In this document: in pieces, positions 1 through 30,689 of the stretch
Layout of the letters: the number at the start of each line of letters is the position of its first letter
How positions within the stretch are numbered: the stretch's first letter is position 1
Assembly: GCA_003693705.1 (NCBI GenBank)
Contig: RBZT01000176.1
Coordinates: 1 to 64,000, forward strand
From: Polymyxa betae A26-41
Lineage: Eukaryota > Protista > Endomyxa: Phytomyxea
Reading direction: 5' to 3'
Length of the DNA: 64,000 nucleotides
The notes under the pieces: generated by a model
The model's database searches: none
Told to the model about the DNA's origin: nothing
The model's input: the letters and a program-made list of their open reading frames with translations, nothing else
Position numbers and translations under genes: made by a program

Positions 1-721
1 CTGTCATCTTGTGCTAGATAAGACGTCTTTGTAGCAATCCTACGAATTCAAGCTTCAGATCCAGGCAAAATTCAGTCTGTATTCCAGCTCCCAGATCCAG
101 ACCGGTTATTCCGTCACGGAGTCCATTTGAGTCCGTGGCGGAGTTCGTCCTGACTATAGGGCCGTTTATATATAATAAAATAAGAGTCTTTTCCTGGAAA
201 TATTCTACAAATATTGACACAATCCCCCGGAATTTTGCAAAATTGCTAGTATCCAAACGCACCCTAAAACAATTCGAAGTGAAGTTTTGTTAAGTCATAA
301 AATCATCAAGCGCCTAATCGCTACTGACTCACAATTGAAATCATCACTCGGCTCATTCAGAGAGGTTCGTGATTCCTCAACATGCCTTGCCAAACGAGGC
401 CGCCCTCAAACTCTGAAATTTCGAATTTCGATTCTCCGGTGGCCAAATAAATGCAAAAGATCCGCTACAAAAAAGCAATAATTGTGCTCATTATGAAAAA
501 GTACTGGGGTTGATGCAATCGATCATCGCATGGGTACCAAATGCCCGTATTTTAAGAAAGATGAATTTGCTGGCTGAAATGTGAAATAATTTAGATAGAC
601 TTCCAAGGTGGATCTATGATAGCCTTCACACAATCTTGAAGTTCATTAATCCAGCCAATCAGATTGCCGGGATGGGAGATATTGAAATCTGCGCGCGGAT
701 GGGGGAGCGGATAGAAACATT

Positions 722-826
722 TCCCGGATACAGTCGGGTAGTGTGGTCGGGTACCGACCTGCTGCCCGATCCCGACCCGACCCCGACCCGATCCGGGTTT
801 TTCGGATACTACCCGAACCCGATCGG
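722..826. repeat. CCCGA/TCGGG-rich imperfect palindrome, possibly a MITE or hAT-type subterminal remnant
   Basis: Many CCCGA units (cccgatcccgacccgaccccgacccgatccggg), flanked by the inverted pair tcgggtagt (734-742) / actacccga (808-816). No TIR or TSD identified. Confidence 0.4.
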
Positions 827-1509
827 AGAACAATTTGGGCTCGAGTGAAAAATCTTAAACTAATGGAGCACCAAGTGATGATGTAAGTTCAAGGATAAAA
901 AAATATTCTGGCAGGAAAAGGCGCGATCGTAACCAAATTCAGAATGTAATTGCAGAGGTCCATCTTGATAAGCGCTCAACAACTAGAGATCTGTCTGATG
1001 CTTTTGATATTTGTGCTGGTACACTGATCAAAGTCCTGAAAGAAGGCAAGCTCCGTGGGGTTAGCAGCTCAACAAGCCGTTACTGACAGATGAGAACAAA
1101 GCCGCAGGATTCTGTTTGCTTTATAAATGTTGATTCCTGGTTCGAATCAGTTCCAGGTCATGTACGATGTGGTACATGTTGACGTCAAATGGCTTTTACA
1201 TGACAAAGGAACCTTTATTTTCTGCTTGATGAACAGGGACCAGTGCGATCCTGTAAAAGCAAACGATTCATTATCAAGGTAATGTTTCTGGCTGCGGTAG
1301 CCCGACCACGATGGGACCAGCATCGTAAAGTTACCGTTTACGTAAATTGACTGTATACAGTAAAAATTTCGATTAAGATTTCTCATATAAGCCCTGAACC
1401 CTGTTTTTGGATGTTTAGGAGCCTGGACGCTGGAATTCCGGCTTCCCAGGGTTGTCATGCCCCTAGGCACGACAGTCCTGGGAGATATAGAGAAGTGCGC
1501 CGCATAGCG

Positions 1510-1915
1510 CGGCCACTCTGATCAACTCCTTTCTCTCGATCGGTTGTCCCTGTCGTCTCGAGAGTCTCGGGCGCACCCGACCTCGACCCCGCCGCCGCCA
1601 AGGTCGCCATCCTCATCACCGTCTCCGCCTCTGCTTATAACATCGCCTTCGCCTTCACCGCGTTCGTCGTCTCCGCCTCTGCCTATAACATCGTCTTCAC
1701 CTTCACCGCGTTCGTCGTCTTCCTCTCAGTTGCTATCGTCTTCCCCGCCTCCGTCACGCTCGTCGTCCACGCCTTTATTGTTATCGTCGTCTTCGCTTCC
1801 GCTACTATTATCGTCTCCCCCTCAATCACTATCGAAGTCTCAGCCCCTGATACTTTCATTGTCTCCGCCCCCGTCGTTACCGTCACCTAGATCATCAATG
1901 CCGCCGCTGTCTTAA
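1510..1915 (-). pseudogene. Degenerate Asp/Gly/Glu-rich coding remnant with a 48-bp tandem duplication
   Basis: The minus strand reads GDDNSSGSEDDDNNKGVDDERDGGGEDDSN*EEDDERGEGEDDVIGRGGDDERGEGEGDVISRGGDGDEDGD with several in-frame TGA. A 48-bp unit (cgtctccgcctctgcYtataacatcg...) is duplicated at about 1620-1720. The Ser/Pro-rich + strand ORF is probably its antisense shadow. Confidence 0.4.
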
Positions 1916-3478
1916 GATTACCAAAGCCCCAAACAACACATCTTCCTGTTTATTGAAATAAACGAGGAACCTTTGATCTGAAGCCTTACAAGGGTCGTAA
2001 TAAGAGCACTCCCTGAGGGTAAATATGCCCGGGCCATCGACTTGAAAGTTCAATTTTCATTGGAGCAATTTTAATGCATACGCCATACTGAACTGAATCG
2101 ATTTTGCGAAGGCTGTGCTTTTACATCGTAGAAGTGCGTTTCATTGCCAAATTAGACAAAACTCGTCCAATCTATAATTAAAAAATTCTTTCGACAATCA
2201 ACACGTATCTTTCTTGAAGAAACGACGGAATTGCTAGAGGTTTCGATTTACAAGCGATTACATCCGCCAATTCTTTTTCAAGGCCCCTAAAATGACGTTG
2301 GCACTTTGATAAGACCCTCAACACTCATTTTGGCTAAGACTCTGGACCCTGGCAATACTTCCGCAGGGCCTTATATTCGAAACTTTTACAGAGCATCCAC
2401 AGCGCGCGCAAATCTGTTCGTCCAAATCTATTCTCAAAATTCTCACACCGCAGGGATTAACTATCCGCAGTTGTATTTCGGTTTTGCCTAAGAACCCGAT
2501 AGAAAGTGCGGGATAGCTGAGGTGCTATTTCAGCGCCGATGAGAGGGAAAATAACGTTGATCTGTTTTAACCTACGGAATAGAGCTGTGCGGTGCGGGCG
2601 GTGTGGATGATCTAAGAATTGATGTTGCATGTGTTGGAGAGATTTCAATTTCAGTACAAGCACCGTCATGTCAACTGTCAAGAATTGATTTTACGGACTT
2701 GTGGCTCCAGCTTCTTTCGGCTGTGACCCGAATGTCATTTCGACTGATTTCTCTCACGCCTTCAGTCGGAGCTCTGTATTACAGATCTAATGGCATGAGC
2801 AAGAATGAAATTGAGGTGAACTCTCTGTTTAATTAATCAGAAACGAAGGAATGGCCAGCGCTGGCCTGGGCGTCAACGCGGAGTGGATGGCTTTGACAGA
2901 AGTGCCGAATGCAAGAGCTGATAAATGTGGCATAAACATAGAATCTACATAGCATCAAATGCACAGTTCCTGATCGATTCATCGAGAAGGCAATAGAATC
3001 GCTACTTATCGTTGTCAGAGAAAGATATAGCTAGCGTCTAATCCACGGGCACACTGGTTCAATTCACCGTTTCGCGGTTAGGGTTAATAAATTGATTATT
3101 ATTTTTATCCAGCTCTGAAAGAGGTCGCCACTCAGAGTTGCTTTTTTCCAACATTCTTGAGTTCTAATGGGTTATTGTCGAAATTAGAAATCGATGGGTA
3201 TGAATTTTGGTTTCAGAATGAGTTTGAGAAGGCGAAATGGAATTTAATATTCAAAGTGTGATAATAGCTACTTACCTTACCTCAGTGAAGCATGCAGCAT
3301 GCTGACTACAAAACTCAGCACTAAATTGCTAATTGAGATCGACTGAGCTCCGGGTACAATGCAGAAAATCTTCGTGAAAACGGGGCGATATTGATTAAGT
3401 AAAGTCAGCGCGGCCTTCGTTGCAATCAGAAGGTGACGCTTCTAAGTGACCTCGATCGAGTCATCGTCTCTTGCTTCT

Positions 3479-6214
3479 ATGTATACTGAATCTGAATCAT
3501 TCGAATATGATCTACATCATATTGCAGTTCATGACGTAGATCATGGTCCGCGTCGTCAAGATTATCAATTTGTCAGTGCTGTCCAGCCTGCACATCGTGT
3601 CCAGCATCATGACAATGAACTAGTCGACGATGATGTCAGAGCCGCCGTCCAGGATTACACCTACAGGCAAGCTCCTGCCAACCAGATTGCATTGCTTGAT
3701 GCTCCCCCGTCACCAGATCACATCATCTCTCCCAATCGGCAATTATTTGCCTTATTAGGAACCTACAAATTTCGGTCATTAGAAGGAATAAGCTCACGAG
3801 AGCTGGGACTCGCTGGGTTCAGGCTGGACCCTCACACTCATTGTCTGTCAAGAACGACCACATACAAATCGCTTTCATTAATATCACTCAATGATACTTC
3901 CACATCCCCAGCGTTGCAAATTCCAGTTCAGTTACCTGATGATGGACGTATCTTGTGTCCTACATTCTCCCATGACTCAAGATATTTGGCATTTCTGCTC
4001 TACTGTCCTTCTTTAAATAAGGATTTTGCTACTGATTCTATCCTTAATCCAATCATACTGTATTACATCGACTGTCAAGATCCAAACCTCCAAATACATC
4101 TGCTTAGTCGGTATCCTGTCAGTCAAATATTTGGCAAGCCCTTCCACTGGACCGCTTCTAACACCGTCATCTTTCGAACTCCACAACCGAATCGTGGCCC
4201 AATACCGACTCGACCAAGGGTGCCTGTAGGCCCAGTTGTCCTAGAAAGTGGTCTTGGACATGACGTTAAACGTCGATGTGGTGGTGAACGGACTTATCAA
4301 GATTTGCTTAAAGACAGCTTCGACTGTCATTTATTCCAATATTTCTGCACGGTTCAGGTAGTTCAATGCTCTCCAACTGGTCAAGATCATCTGCTTCCAT
4401 TAACTGGAACTATCAAAGCCTGTAATCCATCTCCAAATGGCCAATATCTCTTAATTAAGACTATTCATCCACCGTATTCTTATTTCCTTCCTTATCCAAG
4501 GTTTCCAACCAGGATTGAGATCTATCGGCTTTCAGAAAGCGATCTAAAATTCGTTCGGCTGCTCGTTGACTTGAATCTTGCCGACTCTGTTCCGATATCG
4601 TTTGATGCATGTCGTGTTGGCCCTCGACGTGTCAGCTGGCGTTATGATGCTCCATCCTCATTGATATGGGTCGAGGCCCAGGATAATGGTGATCCTAAGT
4701 TTAACCCAATCAATAATGTTCGCGATACGATATGGACACTTTCTGAGCCTTTTTCTTCATCTCCAATCTTTTTTCATCCGTTAAGCCTGCGACTCAAATC
4801 TATTCGGTTCTGGGAAGGTCACGCTTTAATTACTGAACGCTGGTTCAAGACTAGACAGCAGATTACGTGGATGGTTAAGTTCGACTGTGAAAAATACGAT
4901 CAGAAGGTGTTTGCTGTGTCTGTAATTTTTATCTGCATATAAAGTTATTTCAGAATCAATTAGTCTGGTCGGGCTCCTTCGATGATCGATACGACGATCC
5001 AGGTCAGCCGCAGGTTCATCACGATCTTGTTGATCTAACAATCCATCCGGAAACTGGCCATCCTATTCTGACTCTGCTCGGCGATGGCGCCAGCCCTGAT
5101 GGTGATCGCCCTTTTGTGCAAAGCTTTGATTTATGTAAGCTGTTTTGCCTTTTATGTTAGCGATTAATATTTTTTAGACACGCTCACAAAGAACTTGGTG
5201 TGGAGATCTTCGCCGACACATTATGAGCGTCCAATCTTGCGACTGAACGAGGATCACCTCATAATCCTGCGTGAATCTCCAACGCAACCTCCCGAGTTCT
5301 TCCTTGTTTCCATATCGCAAGCGTTTGCTGACGTTCGGTTAAGTATTCAACCTCATCCATGCCCGGAAATGCTCGATATCAAATGCGAACTGATTCGTTA
5401 TGTGCGTGCTGATGGTGTGAAATTGTCTGGATACCTTTATCTTCCCCCTGGGTTTACTCCTGGTAAAGACGAGCCGCTACCTACAGTATTATGGGCGTAT
5501 CCCCGCGAATACAAATCTGTAGACACAGCAAGTCAAGTTGTTGGATCTCCAAACACATTTGCATTAGATAGCCGTCCCTCAATGTACTTTCTTCTTGAGG
5601 GTTATGCTGTACTGGATCGAATGACAATGCCTATTGTTGCCGAAGGTCATAATGCAGAGCCTAATGACACTTACATTGAACAGTTGGTCGCGAATGCAGC
5701 AGGTGCTATTGACTATCTCGTATCAATTGGAGTCACTGATCGTGAGCGTGTTGGAGTTGGCGGGCACTCATATGGTGCATTCATGACAGCTAATCTCCTG
5801 TCACATAGTAACTTATTTGCAGCTGGTGTAGCTCGTTCTGGTGCATATAACCGAACTTTAACACCATTTGGTTTTCAGAAAGAAGAAAGAACATTATGGG
5901 AGGTTCCTCAAATTTATCAAAACATGTCGCCATATATGGCTGCTGATAAGATCCGCACGCCGTTACTCCTGATTCATGGCCAAGCTGATAATAATGCTGG
6001 TACATATCCAATGCAAAGTGAACGTATGTTTGCGGCATTAAAAGGTCATGCTAAAGCGCCAGCAAGATTAGTTCTGCTGCCTTATGAGTCACATCATTAT
6101 AAAAGTCGCGAGTCCAATGCTCATGTCCTCTGGGAATCAACCAGATGGTTTAGTAAATACGTCAAACATAAGAACAATCCGAAACATATTCGATCCAGGA
6201 GCATTTATTTATAA
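3479..6214 (+). CDS. S9 family serine peptidase (prolyl oligopeptidase fold; glutamyl-endopeptidase/S9D-like), 3 exons
   Basis: Nucleophile GGHSYGAF, Asp motif IHGQADNNAGT, His motif LPYESHHY, plus ARSGAYNRTLTPFGFQ and RTYQDLLK. Introns at about 4907-4953 and 5135-5177. Confidence 0.9.
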
Positions 6215-25222: not shown

Positions 25223-26646
25223 TTAGAGTATAGATTTGCCATGCCGGCTTAATCCCGTCACATTCATGAAGCAATAAATCCTACAGAGAATACCGGTCCA
25301 ATACTTGATCATCTCTCTTGCAATAATGGTTGATTTCGTTAGAGTCATATTGACAGTAACAGAGCTTGAAGAAAGGCGATGTATTTATTATCAGGTGATA
25401 GATTGCAGAATATGTCACCATTTGGGTACATTACGAAATCCTACAGCAGGTATCTCTCTACATTTACCATGTTGTAGATCAACAACACGTATAATATTAC
25501 CAGCACCAGCAGATACAAATTCATGTGTTGTAGGATTAAAATGTGATGAATATGATCCTTCAGTCTGTCTATGAAATATATTTGCACCTAAATCTATAAT
25601 ATTTGTACGATCTGGACCATATCTATCTATCACTTGAATCTCATTAGGTTTCGTACCACCAAATCCAATACGAACTGGACCAATCTGTACGGACATGATA
25701 TCAGTATACATGGTCAGTGTAACATGAATGTAACGTATTATGGAACATAAACGAGTGTTGTGCTTACAGTTGAGAACTGTGCAGTATATACCATAGTATT
25801 AGTATGTAATTGTGTAATAGGATGTGATATAGATCTAATATCCCATATCTGTATTTGATCTTTATCAGTCCATGATCCAGTTAATATTTCATGTCCTTTC
25901 ATATCAATAGCATCACCACATATATGAGGTCCATATATTAATGCAGATGATTCTATACCAGGACTAGCACGTATATCCCACATACGTACCTATATCAACT
26001 ATTACAATCTCATACTAATACAGATATTAGAACTTACAGTATCATCCCATCCACCAGATAATATAATATTATCCTGATCTTGATGATATTTCGCTGAAAA
26101 TATTCTATTAGTATGTCCAGATAATGTACGTATAATAGAGCCAGTAGTCTCATCATATACACGAATATGACGATCTTTACCAGCAGTAACTAACATTAGG
26201 GCATCTCTACTATAATCTAATGCCATTAGCTGATTATCAGGTTCAACTAGATGCCGTATCTTAGCACCAGTTTGATAATTATATTCAGCAATATGTCCAT
26301 TAGTATATGTAGCAGCTAATACATGTTGTAATGAATCGGATGTGATCTGAGGTCGAAATCTGATAGATGTAGCAGGTGCTGATGATGTAGTAGCAGTAAT
26401 AAACTGTAGACATGATCCAGTATATGAATGATATATACCAATACATCCATCAGATGTAGATACAGCTATCTGACGTCCATCTTTAGACCATTGTACTGCT
26501 AATATATTCGATATTGATGCAGGGATACGTCGTAAATCTTCCACACTATCTATATGATTATGTCGTAATGCTTGGAAATAATCTACACCGATCCACGATT
26601 GACGGCGTACAACCCCAACATCAGCACCACCTTCCGACATCATCAT
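25223..26646 (-). CDS. WD40-repeat protein, multi-exon; apparent 1-nt frameshift near 25425
   Basis: LVTAGKDRHIRVYD, LSGHTNRIFS, ILSGGWDDTV|RMWD, ILTGSWTDKDQIQIWD. Confidence 0.8.
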
Positions 26647-26676
26647 CTCAATAGATAAGTAATGTGGTGAGAGGCG

Positions 26677-29408
26677 GTACTGGCCCCCCGATCGATATGG
26701 TACGAAATGTTGAGAGATGGTGATAGAGTAGGTGTGTTGTGATTATGAAGGGAGATTCATGTACAGGAGGAGGTCATGTTGATGATGTTGATGGGATCGT
26801 TATTAATGCAGAATCATTACACAAGTTAAAGGCATATTTTGATGATGCAGAATCTGAAGGTAAAGGTGGACTTGCTGAAGATGAGGTTGGTCCCCGTCGG
26901 CATACTGGCCCAACTCGTATGACACATAACGTGTATGATGCAGTTCGTATCGTTACTGGCCCATGTTCTAAAGAAACGTAACACTACAGCACGACAGGAA
27001 CTGACCCATCTATTTATGAAGATAGATGCTAATAGTGATGGATCTGTTGATTGGGATGAATTTACAAATTATTTATTAATGGAGAGTCAATCGAATGATG
27101 TTATTGATAATCATGTATGTACAATATATAGAGACATATATTGACATATCTCATATATATTATATATGTAGCATAATGACCTAGTACCAGCTAATATAAA
27201 TGAACCAGTTGATAATCATCAACATTATCATAAAGATATGATAGAGGATGTTCTGCATCTATCAAAATCTGATAAATACCTAACATGTAGTCGGGATGGA
27301 ACATTTAAAGTAAGTGATTTATTGCATGAAATGTTACAATAGATTCATGTTACATATCTGTAGATCTGGAACTGTAAAGATCTGTCACATTATCGAACAG
27401 TGCGATGTTCAGGTGGATGGATTATTGGATCATGTTTATTACCAAGATCACAACGTATAGCAATATGTAACTTAGACTTAACATTGAATTTCTATGATGT
27501 GAACACATTTGAACTTGTATCACGATTTAATGATGATCCACGTACACGTCATCATCACTTAACTACATCGAAATATCATCAAGGATTACGTCGTACACAA
27601 CCACGAACTCGACTCAGAAACATGCCTGTATCGATCTGTAATATCCCTACTACTGCCCCATCTGTAAACCCTAACAACCCTAGAACCCTAGAACCCTAAC
27701 CCCCTTATAATAGGACCAGTTGGCTGTTGGTGATGTGACCGGCTCTATTACCATCATACAATTTGCTGATAAATGGCATGCATGTGATGGATCTGTACCT
27801 GGTTGCAGTCACGAGACGGGCAAGTACCATGGCGTCCAGCAGACGTACTGGCCCGCCCTACATACCGATTGGATCACAGATTTGAAATTCATTCCAGAGT
27901 TCGATGCCCTGGTAACATCGTCACTGGATCATACGATACAATTTCTGGATCTAGATCGTCGATCAGCTCCAGTCCGTAAACGTTACTTGGGTCATAATCG
28001 GGGTGTAACATCATTCGATTACAGTGCTGCATATAAACTTATGATATCATGTGGATCATCACGACGTATATCTGTATGGGATCCATATAGATGTCGTGAA
28101 GTGAATTCATTATCTGGACATACTGCCCCCGTCCAACAAGTTCTAGCTAATGATGATGTGAATGAGATTATATCTGTATCAGTAGATAAGACTATTAAGA
28201 TATGGGATTGTAGAACATACAGATGTATAAAGACTATACAAGATATACATCATTATAGACCAGAAGATCGTATATCACGTATATCATATATCAAACAATA
28301 TCAATATTTATTAACTGCATCTAATCATATATCTGTATATCAATCATTAACACCAACTAATAATATCGCACCAACTTCACATGATGATGAAATATGTAAT
28401 GCTATCTATAACTCGGGATTTCAACAGGTCTGTTGCCATCATGCCGTCGTACTGGTCCTCTAATTACTGAATGTGGGTATGTTCTCAGGTTGTTAGTGGT
28501 GATCGTTCTGGTGTTATAAAAGTATGGGATTTATTAACAGGACATTTAGTGAGTCAATTTCGTCCAGGACATGGACATGGACGTATAACAGCAATGACAT
28601 TTGATGCATCAATGAGACGTCTAATAACAGGTGCTGATGATGGAACATTAATGATCTGGAATTTCAGTAGTGGTGCCTGTCTATCAACATGTATTAATAA
28701 TGACAAATTATCATCAAGACGAGAGATAACATGTATTGGATTTATTGTTGATGAACGTGTACCAGATCATTCACTACGTCTACTTATTAGTTCAGGATGG
28801 GATGGTAATCTACAGATATGGTTAGATGGAGGATCTCGTGATCTACATAGAGATGGATATATTCAATCTGGTGGTATTGGTCGTGGTCATACAGATGATG
28901 TATCATGTATGTGTATATGTACATGCTCTATTATAGCTACTGGATCATATGATGGATCTATAGGTCACATATCTCTCATATAACATCTATATACTGATTA
29001 TGTTATAGTTATATGGAATCTAGATACTAAACAGGTGAAGAAGAAGATAGATCCTATTACACCTGCATCTAGTATTGATGCATTAGTATGTATTACATCA
29101 TTATCATTAATTATTGCATGTGGTAGTAATGGATCTATACAAGCTCTCGATATGAGCACCTGGACCCGGGCCTGGGCCAGTACGGACGCCAGCCGCTCCT
29201 ATCTCTGTTGTACTGGCCATGGTGAAGAGATATCGTTTGGTCTAGCATCTGGTCAGGTCCATATCTACCATCTCTATCGAGATAGATCCGAATTCGTTCG
29301 AGCATGGCGTGCTCATGATCGAGCTCTGATCAGTATTGAGGCCGTGGGCCAGCACGAGATGCTGGTGACCGGATCCCTAGATCGTCGTGTTCTGTTGTGG
29401 ACCAGTAC
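26677..29408. promoter_or_regulatory. Dispersed array of TACTGGCCC-like motif (putative protein-binding sites)
   Basis: Exact TACTGGCCC at 26678, 26903, 26954, 27846 and, reverse, at 29174. Variants at 27651, 28121, 28450, 29211, 29346 (rev) and 29399 (rev). Confidence 0.6.
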
Positions 29409-29929
29409 GGGGGCGTTGGTTGGTCAATTCTCCTCCTCATCATCTGCTAAATCGTGGAATCTATTTGATAGATCAACATGGATATCATCATTATCAGATC
29501 TTATACAGATTAATAACACATCAACTACTCATACACATGTTAATAATCATCAACATATTACTACCAGTGATTATGATATTATAATCAAGAATAAGGTCAT
29601 ACATGATCAATCAGAAGATGAGTATTGGAAATCGTTAAAATCTGTCAGATCACGATTAAATCAGGTTCGTGATACAACAAATCGCTTGTTCTATCTCCTT
29701 CTAAGAATAGCATCAGAAACTGACCCGGGCCGGTATGGTCGTGGTTAAACCTGAGCCACGAACATCACCTGCCATAACGTCTTCATCAGCAGCAGCGACT
29801 CTAACAGCAATCCAATACCGGGTAGGCAGGGGGTTGGTAGGGTTTTAGGGTTTGTTATCTTAAACGTGATATGTTCAGATTCATAGTAGATTAGAGCTAG
29901 CTGAAGTAGAAGATGTTCCAATGTTATAG
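26745..29929 (+). CDS. EF-hand plus WD40 protein, WDR49/WDY/EFCAB8-like (cilia-associated family), multi-exon
   Basis: LFMKIDANSDGSVDWDEFTNYLLME followed by many WD40 repeats (GHTAPVQQV...ISVSVDKTIKIWD; MTFDASMRRLITGADDGTLMIWNF). Confidence 0.8.
27664..27713 (+). repeat. Intron made mostly of C-strand telomere-like repeats
   Basis: GTaaaccctaacaaccctagaaccctagaaccctaacccccttataatAG. Confidence 0.75.
29822..29878 (+). repeat. Intron with G-strand telomere-like, G-quadruplex-prone tract
   Basis: GTaggcagggggttggtagggttttagggtttg...cAG. Confidence 0.6.
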
Positions 29930-29953
29930 TGTAATATTACCTGTATTATATTA

Positions 29954-30427
29954 TTAATTAATAATCTTATACATATATTGATGTTTAATACCAATCTCAA
30001 TGAATGGTTCAGTATTAGGTATAATATTATATCCTAATTTCTTATAGAATCCAATAGCATCTTCTCTTGCATGAAGCTCTATACGAACTTCTCCATCATA
30101 TTCATTTGATAGATATTTCTCTAGAGTATGAACTAGACCTGTTCCAATTCCATTTCCAACATGATCAGCATGTACAGCCATCTGAAACAATCTGCCTGTT
30201 AATCTCTCTAAATCGCTTAACTTGAATAAACAGCATCCAATAATACGATCATGATATATAGCTGATACATGCATTGTCTGAGATGTATCTTCACCTGGGA
30301 ATATCTCTACATCTGTATCTGGACCTAAATGAGATCTAAGACGTAATCTTCGAAGATCTCGTTCTGATTGATAAAGATCACGATCAGGTAATGAATCCCC
30401 GGCCCAGACCTTGTACATAATCTTCAT
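29954..30427 (-). CDS. GNAT N-acetyltransferase (ElaA/YjcF-like), intronless
   Basis: GRLFQMAVHADHVGNGIGTGLV (acetyl-CoA motif A); LHAREDAIGFYKKLGY...FIEIGIKHQYM. Confidence 0.85.
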   Translation of the reverse strand: MKIMYKVWAGDSLPDRDLYQSERDLRRLRLRSHLGPDTDVEIFPGEDTSQTMHVSAIYHDRIIGCCLFKLSDLERLTGRLFQMAVHADHVGNGIGTGLVHTLEKYLSNEYDGEVRIELHAREDAIGFYKKLGYNIIPNTEPFIEIGIKHQYMYKIIN

Positions 30428-30689
30428 GATTGATGTTATAACAATAGACAACTATCACAATAGACCGTCTTGTATTTGTCCTGTAAATAAGCTCTCTATT
30501 ATCATTAATTAATATGAGCCATGCCCTAATACTGGCAGAGCTCAGCCCTGGCAACAGCCATGGCAAGGCTCCACTGTGAGAGCGCAACCCTGGCAACACC
30601 AGTCAGGTGACGCTCCACTGAGACACAGTCAGCACCAGGGTCGGCCCCAGTGGCAGAAGAATATATGACCAAGCCCTCTTAAAGTGCTG

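What the first reader, a model, noticed from the sequence alone, without database searches (positions are those of the whole stretch)
26677..29408. Hidden array of a GC-rich DNA motif (TACTGGCCC) laid over a gene regardless of frame, strand or exon/intron status
Seen: five exact TACTGGCCC copies (26678 in the divergent promoter, 26903 in an intron, 26954 and 27846 in exons, 29174 on the reverse strand). There are also about six near-copies (TACTGCCCC 27651 and 28121; TACTGGTCC 28450 in an intron and 29399 rev; TACTGGCCA 29211; GGGCCAGCAC 29346). All lie within 2.7 kb of otherwise very AT-rich DNA. Chance expectation for a given 9-mer in 2.7 kb on both strands is about 0.02 at uniform composition, and I noticed no exact copy elsewhere in the window. 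Copies often sit in small GC-richer patches. Inference: this is a DNA-level signal not explained by the protein, for example binding sites for a centromere, insulator or origin factor. I know of no described motif that matches.
Basis: partly seen in the sequence, partly recalled or inferred. Interest (0 to 1): 0.8.

Follow-up and report, generated by a model that had tools for sequence, protein, structure and literature searches.

The report
Genome-wide DNA word with GC halo
The clustered TACTGGCCC copies are real, but they do not mark a centromere: they belong to a short DNA word (core CGTACTGGCCC) that this beet-root parasite carries thousands of times, inside and outside genes, each copy sitting in its own roughly 50-base GC-rich halo, an unexplained DNA-level signal that overrides codon and even amino-acid choice.

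Summary
All 5 exact TACTGGCCC copies in the window lie within 26678-29182, and no shuffle reaches 5. With near-copies there are 12 sites. They lie in the 5'UTR/divergent promoter, two introns and four exons of one expressed EF-hand/WD40 gene, on both strands.

The centromere/insulator/origin reading is not supported. The genome matches the Polymyxa betae draft by its assembly statistics. It holds 1,236 copies of the 9-mer (control 115) and 649 of the 11-mer CGTACTGGCCC (control 4). Clusters occur on many contigs, some denser than this one.

The word occurs in all six reading frames and equally on sense and antisense strands, so it acts at DNA level. In orthologues the residues it encodes differ (TYWP vs RHLR; TAP vs AAA).

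Each copy centres a GC halo. In this gene GC3 is 0.19 away from copies, 0.56 in the +-15 nt flanks and 0.77 in the core, fading by about 25 nt. A second AT-rich locus shows the same gradient. Three earlier first-stage notes of this scan describe similar patchy domains elsewhere in this genome.

My best guess is a factor-recognised site that focuses GC-biased short-patch repair or gene conversion. About 10% of exact 11-mers sit in a repeat found at contig ends, which I could not read. I found no description in the papers searched.

The parts
26610..29929 (+). Host gene: EF-hand + WD40 protein with 9 exons and 8 GT..AG introns (26886-26943, 27115-27171, 27310-27363, 27664-27713, 28428-28488, 28964-29008, 29665-29716, 29822-29878). 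Start codon at 26745, stop at 29927-29929.
   Evidence: Spliced transcript contigs from 4 runs. Pfam finds EF-hand and WD40 domains exon by exon. Every exon reads open in its phase.
26676..26686 (+). Motif copy GGTACTGGCCC (exact 9-mer), 18.0 bits. It lies in the 98-nt interval between the divergent start codons (26646 on -, 26745 on +) and is probably in the 5'UTR.
26901..26911 (+). Motif copy CATACTGGCCC (exact 9-mer), 20.0 bits, in intron 1.
26952..26962 (+). Exact 9-mer TACTGGCCC in exon 2, frame L-L-A-H. The 5' part reads TCGTTAC, one extra T compared with TCGTAC, so it scores below 10 bits.
27818..27828 (-). Weak copy GGTACTTGCCC, 10.2 bits, in exon 5. It shares a GC patch with the next copy.
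27844..27854 (+). Exact 11-mer CGTACTGGCCC, 19.7 bits, in exon 5. It encodes T-Y-W-P where the orthologue has R-H-L-R.
28119..28129 (+). Near-copy CATACTGCCCC, 15.2 bits, in exon 5. It encodes H-T-A-P where the orthologue has H-A-A-A.
28448..28458 (+). Copy CGTACTGGTCC, 16.2 bits, in intron 5.
29174..29184 (-). Exact 11-mer, 26.1 bits (the best in the window), in exon 7, at the centre of the GC patch 29131-29229.
29209..29219 (+). Near-copy TGTACTGGCCA, 11.9 bits, in exon 7.
29346..29356 (-). Copy CGTGCTGGCCC, 16.1 bits, in exon 7, within GC patch 29305-29395.
29399..29409 (-). Copy CGTACTGGTCC, 18.6 bits, in exon 7.
29727..29737 (-). Copy CATACCGGCCC, 17.9 bits, in exon 8.

Best explanation
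SHOWN. The array is a locally dense group of 12 copies of a genome-wide DNA word. Its core is CGTACTGGCCC. The tolerated form is CGTAC[T>C>A]GG[C>A>T]CC, and weak G-rich preferences extend the informative span to about 17 nt. The word is 90-160 times over-represented in this genome. It is found in exons (all frames), introns, UTRs and intergenic DNA, on either strand, with no preferred spacing or orientation. Each copy is the centre of a roughly symmetric GC-enrichment halo that fades within about 25 nt on each side. The halo includes synonymous third-codon positions and intron bases. In GC-rich DNA the halo is hard to see. INFERRED. The position-specific tolerance points to recognition by a sequence-specific factor, most likely a DNA-binding protein. 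The graded halo points to a local, GC-biased DNA transaction centred on the bound site. Candidates are short-patch repair or non-crossover gene conversion with GC bias, or conversely local shielding from the AT-biased mutation pressure that shaped the island. Because the word is far more frequent than composition allows and replaces amino acids, the same process probably favours the word itself, by drive or by selection. Why this one gene in the island is dense is not explained.
For: Abundance: 9-mer 1,236 vs 115; 11-mer 649 vs 4; up to 1 mismatch 3,431 vs 305; 13-mer 175 vs 0. DNA-level: all six frames, with 13 sense and 12 antisense among clear ORFs; copies in introns and UTR; orthologue residues differ at the motif (TYWP/RHLR, TAP/AAA) while flanks are conserved and there is no indel. 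Recognition code: among the first 100 CGTACNGGNCC listed, position 6 is T63/C21/A15/G1 and position 9 is C51/A27/T18/G4, while four core positions are at least 95% invariant. Halo: GC3 is 0.19 at rest, 0.56 in the flank and 0.77 in the core, and 0 of 2,000 random placements reach the flank value. The gradient runs 0.70, about 0.45, about 0.32, then baseline by 25 nt. L015 shows the same gradient. In 27.5 kb of AT-rich DNA, 12 of 15 GC patches hold a motif copy. Enrichment over column-shuffled matrices is 13-25 times in every GC class and over 100 times in the most AT-rich class. Sites are independent of one another: 106 same-strand and 105 opposite-strand neighbours, with no periodicity. The sequence is real: transcript contigs from four studies show no differences at the copies. 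No paralogous donor exists for the patches.
Against: No binding factor, recombination map or polymorphism data exist, so the mechanism rests on inference from pattern alone. A classic recombination-hotspot motif should erode rather than accumulate. High motif density does not by itself make DNA GC-rich: this gene has about 27 sites per 10 kb yet only 38% GC. The neighbouring island genes have no copies, so a purely regional process is not enough. My 258-kb sample was largely chosen for containing the motif. The only unselected DNA is the rest of the window and ten dynein loci. About 10% of exact 11-mers belong to a dispersed repeat at contig ends that I could not read, and it may point to a different origin.
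Confidence: 0.45

Rival explanations
1. Selected binding sites surviving in an eroding gene. The gene was once GC-rich and motif-dense, like L001. AT-biased mutation has since eroded everything except sites kept by purifying selection for a chromatin, architectural or regulatory factor. On this view the GC halo is a relic protected by the bound protein, not newly made.
For: Site density in this gene (11 sites of at least 10 bits in 3.1 kb) equals that of the GC-rich dense locus L001 (41 in 10 kb). The relative's protein is poorer in AT-codon amino acids, which suggests the AT shift is derived in this lineage. The tolerance is position-specific.
Against: Selection on a 17-nt site does not explain a graded halo out to about 25 nt at synonymous sites. 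Neighbouring island genes kept no copies. The motif-encoded residues differ from the orthologue, so the sites are not ancestral to both lineages. Protection cannot create the 20-fold or greater excess seen in GC-rich DNA.
Confidence: 0.2
2. Mobile- or repeat-element origin. The word is the recognition or terminal sequence of a repeated element that also breaks the assembly. The solo copies are decoys, footprints or sites recognised by that element's enzyme.
For: The 23-mer GGGCCAGTACGACTGCCTGGTGG has 67 copies vs 0 control. Of these, 24 lie on the + strand 100-210 nt from contig starts and about 25 lie on the - strand at high coordinates. In C268 the motif is followed 60 nt later by CCCTAAA. 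Motif density correlates with telomere-like words (rho 0.58).
Against: The repeat explains only 67 of 649 exact 11-mers. None of the 56 sampled copies and none in the window carries its flank. Exonic copies are substitutional, with no indel against orthologues. There are no paired inverted copies, target duplications or conserved flanks.
Confidence: 0.15
3. Locus-specific centromere, insulator or origin box.
For: The cluster is locally significant and lies in an AT-rich island.
Against: There are thousands of dispersed copies and many clusters per assembly. Density rises with GC. The array lies in an expressed, spliced gene. The rest of the island has no copies.
Confidence: 0.04
4. Cis-regulatory motif of a co-expressed gene class (flagellar or centrosomal genes), placed in gene bodies.
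For: Annotated motif-dense ORFs are a divergent tubulin, HAUS4, a HYDIN/CFAP-like protein and an AK7-like kinase. Motif-free ORFs are metabolic or unrelated.
Against: Ten dynein-heavy-chain loci (32.7 kb) carry only 6 sites, which is the genome-average density. An amino-acid permease ORF is also dense. Sites lie in exons on both strands at about one per 250 bp, which is unlike transcription-factor sites.
Confidence: 0.05
5. Chance, codon usage or a repeated peptide.
For: Several genome-wide copies read G-Q-Y or V-L-A, which are common residues.
Against: No shuffle reaches the observed count. The 11-mer stands at 649 vs 4. All six frames, introns and UTR are used.
Confidence: 0.01

Closest known systems
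Bacterial hyper-abundant words (DNA uptake sequences USS/DUS; Chi)
   Same: It is a 9-12 nt word about 100 times over-represented and scattered through coding DNA in whatever frame tolerates it. There is a graded excess of one-mismatch variants. It appears to influence amino-acid content (YWP, GQY, VLA).
   Different: This is a eukaryotic nuclear genome with no uptake machinery. Strand bias relative to replication could not be tested. A GC halo around each copy is not a feature of USS or Chi. The resemblance comes from my own knowledge and is a lead, not a membership claim.
Recombination-hotspot motifs with GC-biased gene conversion (e.g. the PRDM9 13-mer in mammals)
   Same: It is a short degenerate motif with a protein-like recognition code. 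It sits at the centre of a narrow zone of GC-biased change that also affects synonymous sites.
   Different: Hotspot motifs erode in the lineage that uses them, whereas this one is enriched 90-160 times. No recombination data or PRDM9-type gene was examined. The halo is narrower (about +-25 nt).
Motif-directed chromosome breakage with telomere addition (Tetrahymena Cbs; nematode elimination motifs)
   Same: A conserved word of about 15 nt is associated with telomere-like tracts. The window's gene has two introns made largely of such tracts. A sub-family of copies sits at a fixed distance from about 50 contig ends.
   Different: Most copies lie inside intact, expressed genes. No telomere arrays were found at those contig ends. 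Nothing here shows DNA elimination in plasmodiophorids.
Point or regional centromere elements
   Same: The setting is AT-rich and the cluster of a specific word is local.
   Different: It is not one per chromosome, it is not gene-free, it is transcribed, and the word is densest in GC-rich DNA.

Membership tests
Centromere DNA element | One locus (or one cluster) per chromosome | tested here: not met
   There are 1,236 9-mers and 649 11-mers across the assembly, with several clusters per contig (C19, C53, C74, C143).
Centromere DNA element | Coincides with a GC trough or a gene-poor, silent region | tested here: not met
   Density rises with GC. The array lies in a spliced, expressed gene. The rest of the AT-rich island has no copies.
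Centromere DNA element | CENH3/kinetochore occupancy | not testable with these tools
   No ChIP or Hi-C data.
Hyper-abundant genomic word of the USS/DUS/Chi type | Large excess over composition, with a graded excess of variants | tested here: met
   The exact 11-mer stands at 649 vs 4 and the one-mismatch class at 2,782 vs 301.
Hyper-abundant genomic word of the USS/DUS/Chi type | Independent of reading frame and coding status | tested here: met
   All six frames; introns, UTR and exons.
Hyper-abundant genomic word of the USS/DUS/Chi type | A known machinery that reads the word (uptake receptor, RecBCD) | not testable with these tools
   No candidate reader was identified.
Recombination-hotspot motif with gBGC | GC-biased change centred on the motif, including silent sites | tested here: met
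   GC3 falls from 0.70 to baseline within about 25 nt, and 0 of 2,000 random placements match the flank value. Whether this is gain or retention was not polarised.
Recombination-hotspot motif with gBGC | Motif depleted or eroding in the lineage that uses it | tested here: not met
   It is strongly enriched in P. betae. It is weak or absent in the one locus of a relative (6 sites vs 2.5 control in 17.5 kb).
Recombination-hotspot motif with gBGC | Elevated crossover, non-crossover or DSB rate at the sites | not testable with these tools
   No genetic map or DSB data.
Transposon terminal repeat / MITE | Conserved sequence beyond the core, target-site duplication, paired inverted ends | tested here: not met
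   This holds for the window copies and 56 sampled copies. Information is confined to about 17 nt. There is no orientation or spacing preference. There is no indel against orthologues.
Transposon terminal repeat / MITE | Membership of a multi-copy element with fixed internal position | tested here: inconclusive
   A 67-copy repeat carries the word about 175 nt from contig ends.
Plant-type telo-box + site II (TGGGCY) promoter pair | T before GGGCC; location in promoters or 5' regions | tested here: not met
   There is no base preference at the position flanking GGGCC (position +11: A31 C26 G18 T26). Most copies are in gene bodies.
Known RNA family | Match to an Rfam covariance model | tested here: not met
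   The only match is sub-threshold (22.9 bits against a gathering score of 60).

The most novel reading that the evidence does not exclude
A eukaryotic nuclear genome carries a self-propagating DNA word. A sequence-specific factor directs GC-biased short-patch repair or gene conversion that both creates and maintains CGTACTGGCCC sites. The process rewrites synonymous sites and even amino acids in thousands of places. This would be a eukaryotic counterpart of the molecular drive behind bacterial uptake sequences. It may be linked to a repeat at assembly breaks and to the telomere-like tracts that fill introns of the same gene.
Probability: 0.25. Interest if true: 0.85.

Novelty: new variant of a known kind. 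Interest (0 to 1): 0.68.

Why it matters
If the word is read by a factor that focuses GC-biased repair or conversion, Polymyxa betae would offer a compact eukaryotic genome with thousands of defined point sources of biased substitution. The effect of each on codons and proteins could be measured directly. That bears on long-standing questions about how GC-content heterogeneity and codon usage arise, and how far non-adaptive drive can override protein sequence. Practically, the word and its halo are a strong confounder for codon-usage, selection and horizontal-transfer analyses in plasmodiophorids. They also seem linked to the places where the draft assembly breaks. In addition, it would be the first genome-wide DNA signal described for this group of crop-virus vectors. 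I found none in the genome papers I read (PMC6328671, PMC4815078).

Tried and rejected
(1) Centromere box: rejected by genome-wide counts and by the many clusters.
(2) Peptide or codon-usage origin: rejected.
(3) Ectopic conversion from a paralogue: the patch 29100-29440 has no other copy in the genome.
(4) Flagellar/centrosomal gene-class marker: suggested, then rejected on ten dynein loci.
(5) Preferred spacing, orientation or codon phase between sites: none found.
(6) MITE or tandem-repeat structure in the locus: none found.
(7) Known RNA family: none.
(8) Literature: the word occurs only inside primers and constructs in unrelated papers. The Polymyxa and Plasmodiophora genome papers do not mention it. 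Searches on plasmodiophorid centromeres and on hotspot motifs with gBGC gave nothing relevant.
(9) Telomere arrays at the contig ends that carry the word: only 3 perfect (CCCTAAA)3 exist in the genome, and no AACCCTA lies 100-160 nt outward of the motif there.
(10) Orthologue DNA for this gene: two fragments exist (P0080, P0152), but their contigs could not be fetched, so only protein-level comparison was possible. A dynein exon found no close plasmodiophorid relatives. The L008/L021 orthologous pair gave only two alignable motif sites.
I did not try to read more genome sequence by other means.
(12) I did not search a joined coding sequence. Exons were searched and translated one by one, by reference.
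Full report
OBSERVATION. The window holds exactly five TACTGGCCC copies, at 26678, 26903, 26954 and 27846 (+) and 29174 (-), and none elsewhere. Dinucleotide-preserving shuffles give a mean of 0.15, and none of 100 reaches five. Allowing one mismatch gives 20 copies against 5.7 expected. The surrounding 23-30 kb has 35-40% GC, against 42-50% elsewhere in the window.

THE GENE. Contigs of four public runs, which are spliced and therefore derive from transcripts, were laid on 26000-30100. They define one + strand gene with eight GT..AG introns: 26886-26943, 27115-27171, 27310-27363, 27664-27713, 28428-28488, 28964-29008, 29665-29716 and 29822-29878. Taken exon by exon, every exon is open in its phase, and Pfam finds an EF-hand pair followed by WD40 repeats. 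I searched the exons separately by reference and left out the joined coding sequence. 26903 and 28450 are intronic. 26678 lies in the 98 nt between the divergent start codons and is covered by transcript contigs. The remaining copies are exonic, in three different frames and on both strands. No run shows a sequence difference at any copy.

THE ORGANISM. Earlier notes of this scan call the genome a sugar-beet root parasite. The assembly statistics (1,001 contigs, 27.09 Mb) match the published Polymyxa betae draft RBZT01, which has 45.1% GC (PMC6328671).

THE WORD IS GENOME-WIDE. The 9-mer occurs 1,236 times in the assembly, against 115 for the reversed control. Half of the copies are preceded by CG. 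The 11-mer CGTACTGGCCC occurs 649 times against 4. Base composition predicts about 7.5 by my arithmetic, so the excess is 90-160 fold. With up to one mismatch there are 3,431 against 305. CGTACNGGNCC occurs 1,932 times against 139, and the 13-mer GTCGTACTGGCCC 175 times against 0. In 258 kb of sampled DNA, sub-words of GGTCGTACTGGCCC top the maximal-order Markov ranking of 7-mers, together with telomere-like words. A weight matrix built from loci outside the window carries information over about 17 nt, G.GG.CGTACTGGCCC.SG. Four core positions are at least 95% invariant. Position 6 accepts T>C>A and position 9 accepts C>A>T, and G is almost excluded at both (T63/C21/A15/G1 and C51/A27/T18/G4 among the first 100 listed). 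That is a recognition code, not uniform mutational decay.

NOT A CENTROMERE BOX. Clusters occur on many contigs. L001 (contig C19) has 22 matrix hits in 3 kb and 41 in 10 kb. These spread over a HAUS4 gene, a divergent tubulin gene and an AK7-like gene, on both strands. Site density rises with GC, from 0.28 per 2 kb at 42-46% GC to 5.25 at 55-60%. Enrichment over column-shuffled matrices is 13-25 fold in every GC class.

The window's cluster is still exceptional for its setting. It has 9 sites of at least 12 bits in 3.3 kb, about 27 per 10 kb. Unselected DNA has 0.75 per 10 kb: one site in the other 60.7 kb of the window and 6 in 32.7 kb of dynein loci. For DNA below 40% GC the excess over control is more than 100-fold.

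A DNA-LEVEL SIGNAL. Among 56 exact copies sampled, the likely reading frames give V-L-A, A-S-T, G-Q-Y, G-P-V, Y-W-P and T-G-P. Where the ORF is clear, 13 copies are on the sense strand and 12 on the antisense strand. Two orthologue fragments from relatives could be compared as proteins. At the exact copy 27846, P. betae has QTYWPALHTDWITD and the relative has QRHLRALHTDWITD. At 28121 it has SGHTAPVQQ against SGHAAAVQQ. There is no length difference in either case. So conserved residues do not explain the word. It sits where the protein tolerates change, and it arose by substitution, not insertion. One 17.5-kb locus of a relative (49% protein identity, 63% GC) has 6 sites of at least 12 bits against 2.5 for controls. 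P. betae DNA of that GC class would have about 50. On this small sample, the strong enrichment looks specific to the lineage.

THE GC HALO. In this gene, third-codon positions are 19% GC away from the word. They are 56% GC in the 15 nt on either side of a core, with the core excluded, and 77% inside cores. None of 2,000 random placements reaches the flank value. Intron bases show the same trend, 48% against 35%. The gradient is smooth and roughly symmetric: 0.70 at 1-8 nt, about 0.45 at 9-16 nt, about 0.32 at 17-24 nt, and baseline beyond 25 nt. A second AT-rich locus, L015 on contig C71 (39.7% GC, 15 sites), shows the same gradient over all positions. Conversely, in 27.5 kb of AT-rich DNA, 12 of 15 GC-rich patches contain a site, although patches cover only 5.4% of the sequence. 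The patches have no second copy in the genome, so conversion from a paralogue is not the source. Three earlier first-stage notes (s1-674043, s1-674234, s1-658465) describe GTACTGG-bearing GC patches in AT-rich exons on other pieces of this genome. They are unchecked, but they agree with what I measured on L015, so the scan has met this phenomenon before on other DNA.

MECHANISM. The following is shown: a point-like, strand-blind and frame-blind element with a defined recognition code and a graded halo of about 50 bp at silent sites. The rest is inferred. A sequence-specific factor probably reads the word. A GC-biased DNA transaction centred on it, either short-patch repair or non-crossover conversion, or alternatively local shielding from AT-biased mutation, shapes the flanks. 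Some bias or selection favours the word itself.

I put 0.45 on this family of explanations. Three things count against a plain hotspot model. Hotspot motifs should erode. Dense sites have not made this gene GC-rich. The neighbouring island genes have none. Neighbouring sites show no preferred spacing, orientation or phase, which argues against a structured array or paired element ends. A gene-class explanation looked promising at first, because the dense ORFs were tubulin, HAUS4, HYDIN-like and AK7-like while the motif-free ORFs were metabolic. It failed on ten dynein-heavy-chain loci, which have only average density.

AN OPEN LEAD. About a fifth of the listed 13-mer copies lie on the minus strand 168-207 nt from the start of their contig. 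The 23-mer GGGCCAGTACGACTGCCTGGTGG has 67 copies against 0 for the control. Of these, 24 are on the + strand 100-210 nt from contig starts, about 25 are on the - strand at high coordinates (probably contig ends), and 8 are interior. So a dispersed repeat that breaks the assembly carries the word at a fixed internal position. In C268 the word is followed 60 nt inward by CCCTAAA, across a GC-rich hairpin, which fits the unchecked note s1-684880.

These contig ends do not carry canonical telomere arrays or telomere-like words outward of the motif. The repeat accounts for only about 10% of exact 11-mers, and none of the window's copies has its flank. It may still hold the key to the factor that reads the word.

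Telomere-like words are the other hyper-abundant family in the sample. Their density correlates with motif density across loci (rho 0.58, p 0.006, on a biased sample). The only multi-unit tracts in the window fill introns 4 and 8 of this same gene.

COMPARISON AND NOVELTY. The closest analogues in behaviour are bacterial uptake and Chi words (abundance, frame-independence, graded variants) and mammalian hotspot motifs with GC-biased conversion (halo at silent sites). It meets some defining features of each and fails or cannot be tested on others, so I file it under neither. I found no description of the word in the papers searched. I rate it a new variant of a known kind, with a 0.25 chance that it is a truly new, self-propagating eukaryotic word.

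VERDICT. The DNA-level reading is supported. The centromere/insulator/origin reading is not supported. Interest 0.68.

Noticed in passing
window 27664-27713 and 29822-29878: Two introns of the host gene consist largely of degenerate telomere-like repeats: the C-strand (CCCTAA-type) in intron 4 and the G-strand (TTTAGGG-type) in intron 8. The 5' splice site of intron 4 (GTAAAC) is itself part of the repeat. Transcript contigs confirm that both are spliced out.
   Followed up: partly
G000 contig starts, e.g. C64:171, C106:174, C162:179, C268:178, C506:175 (not in the window): A 67-copy dispersed repeat (23-mer GGGCCAGTACGACTGCCTGGTGG, 53 exact copies) carries the motif about 175 nt from roughly 50 contig ends, always with the GGGCC side facing outward. 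It breaks the assembly and could not be read.
   Followed up: partly
sample of 258 kb (window + L001-L020): AAACCCTAA and related telomere-like words are the most frequent 9-mers after the motif. Only 3 perfect (CCCTAAA)3 arrays exist in the whole assembly. Telomere-like word density correlates with motif density (rho 0.58).
   Followed up: partly
window 26571-26639: A second transcript contig type differs at 26571, 26575, 26584 and 26599. It runs on past 26639 into unrelated sequence (CAAAATCAGAGAGG...). This may be a paralogue or allele of the divergent WD40 gene, or an upstream spliced exon.
   Followed up: no
window 29938-29988: A CT..AC joint (a minus-strand intron of 51 nt) lies just after the host gene's stop codon. 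It belongs to the convergent minus-strand gene 29954-30451, so the 3' ends of the two genes abut or overlap.
   Followed up: no
L001 (G000:C19:31000-40999) 325-5500: Three adjacent genes with microtubule or cilium functions (HAUS4, a divergent tubulin, and an AK7-like adenylate kinase with an N-terminal Rossmann domain) lie side by side in the densest motif domain seen.
   Followed up: partly
sample of 258 kb: GTAACG/CGTTAC and AAACGTAA are also over-represented under a maximal-order Markov model. This agrees with an earlier follow-up on another piece of this genome (s1-673903).
   Followed up: no
L021 6172-6182 (relative, Logan SRR20204234): One exact CGTACTGGCCC occurs in 17.5 kb of a relative's DNA, where about 0.02 is expected from composition. 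This may be a hint that the word is weakly favoured there too.
   Followed up: no
window 28652, 29238, 29268: Run X12, from another study and organism label, differs from the window at three positions in the gene (T>A, T>A, C>T). None is in a motif core.
   Followed up: no
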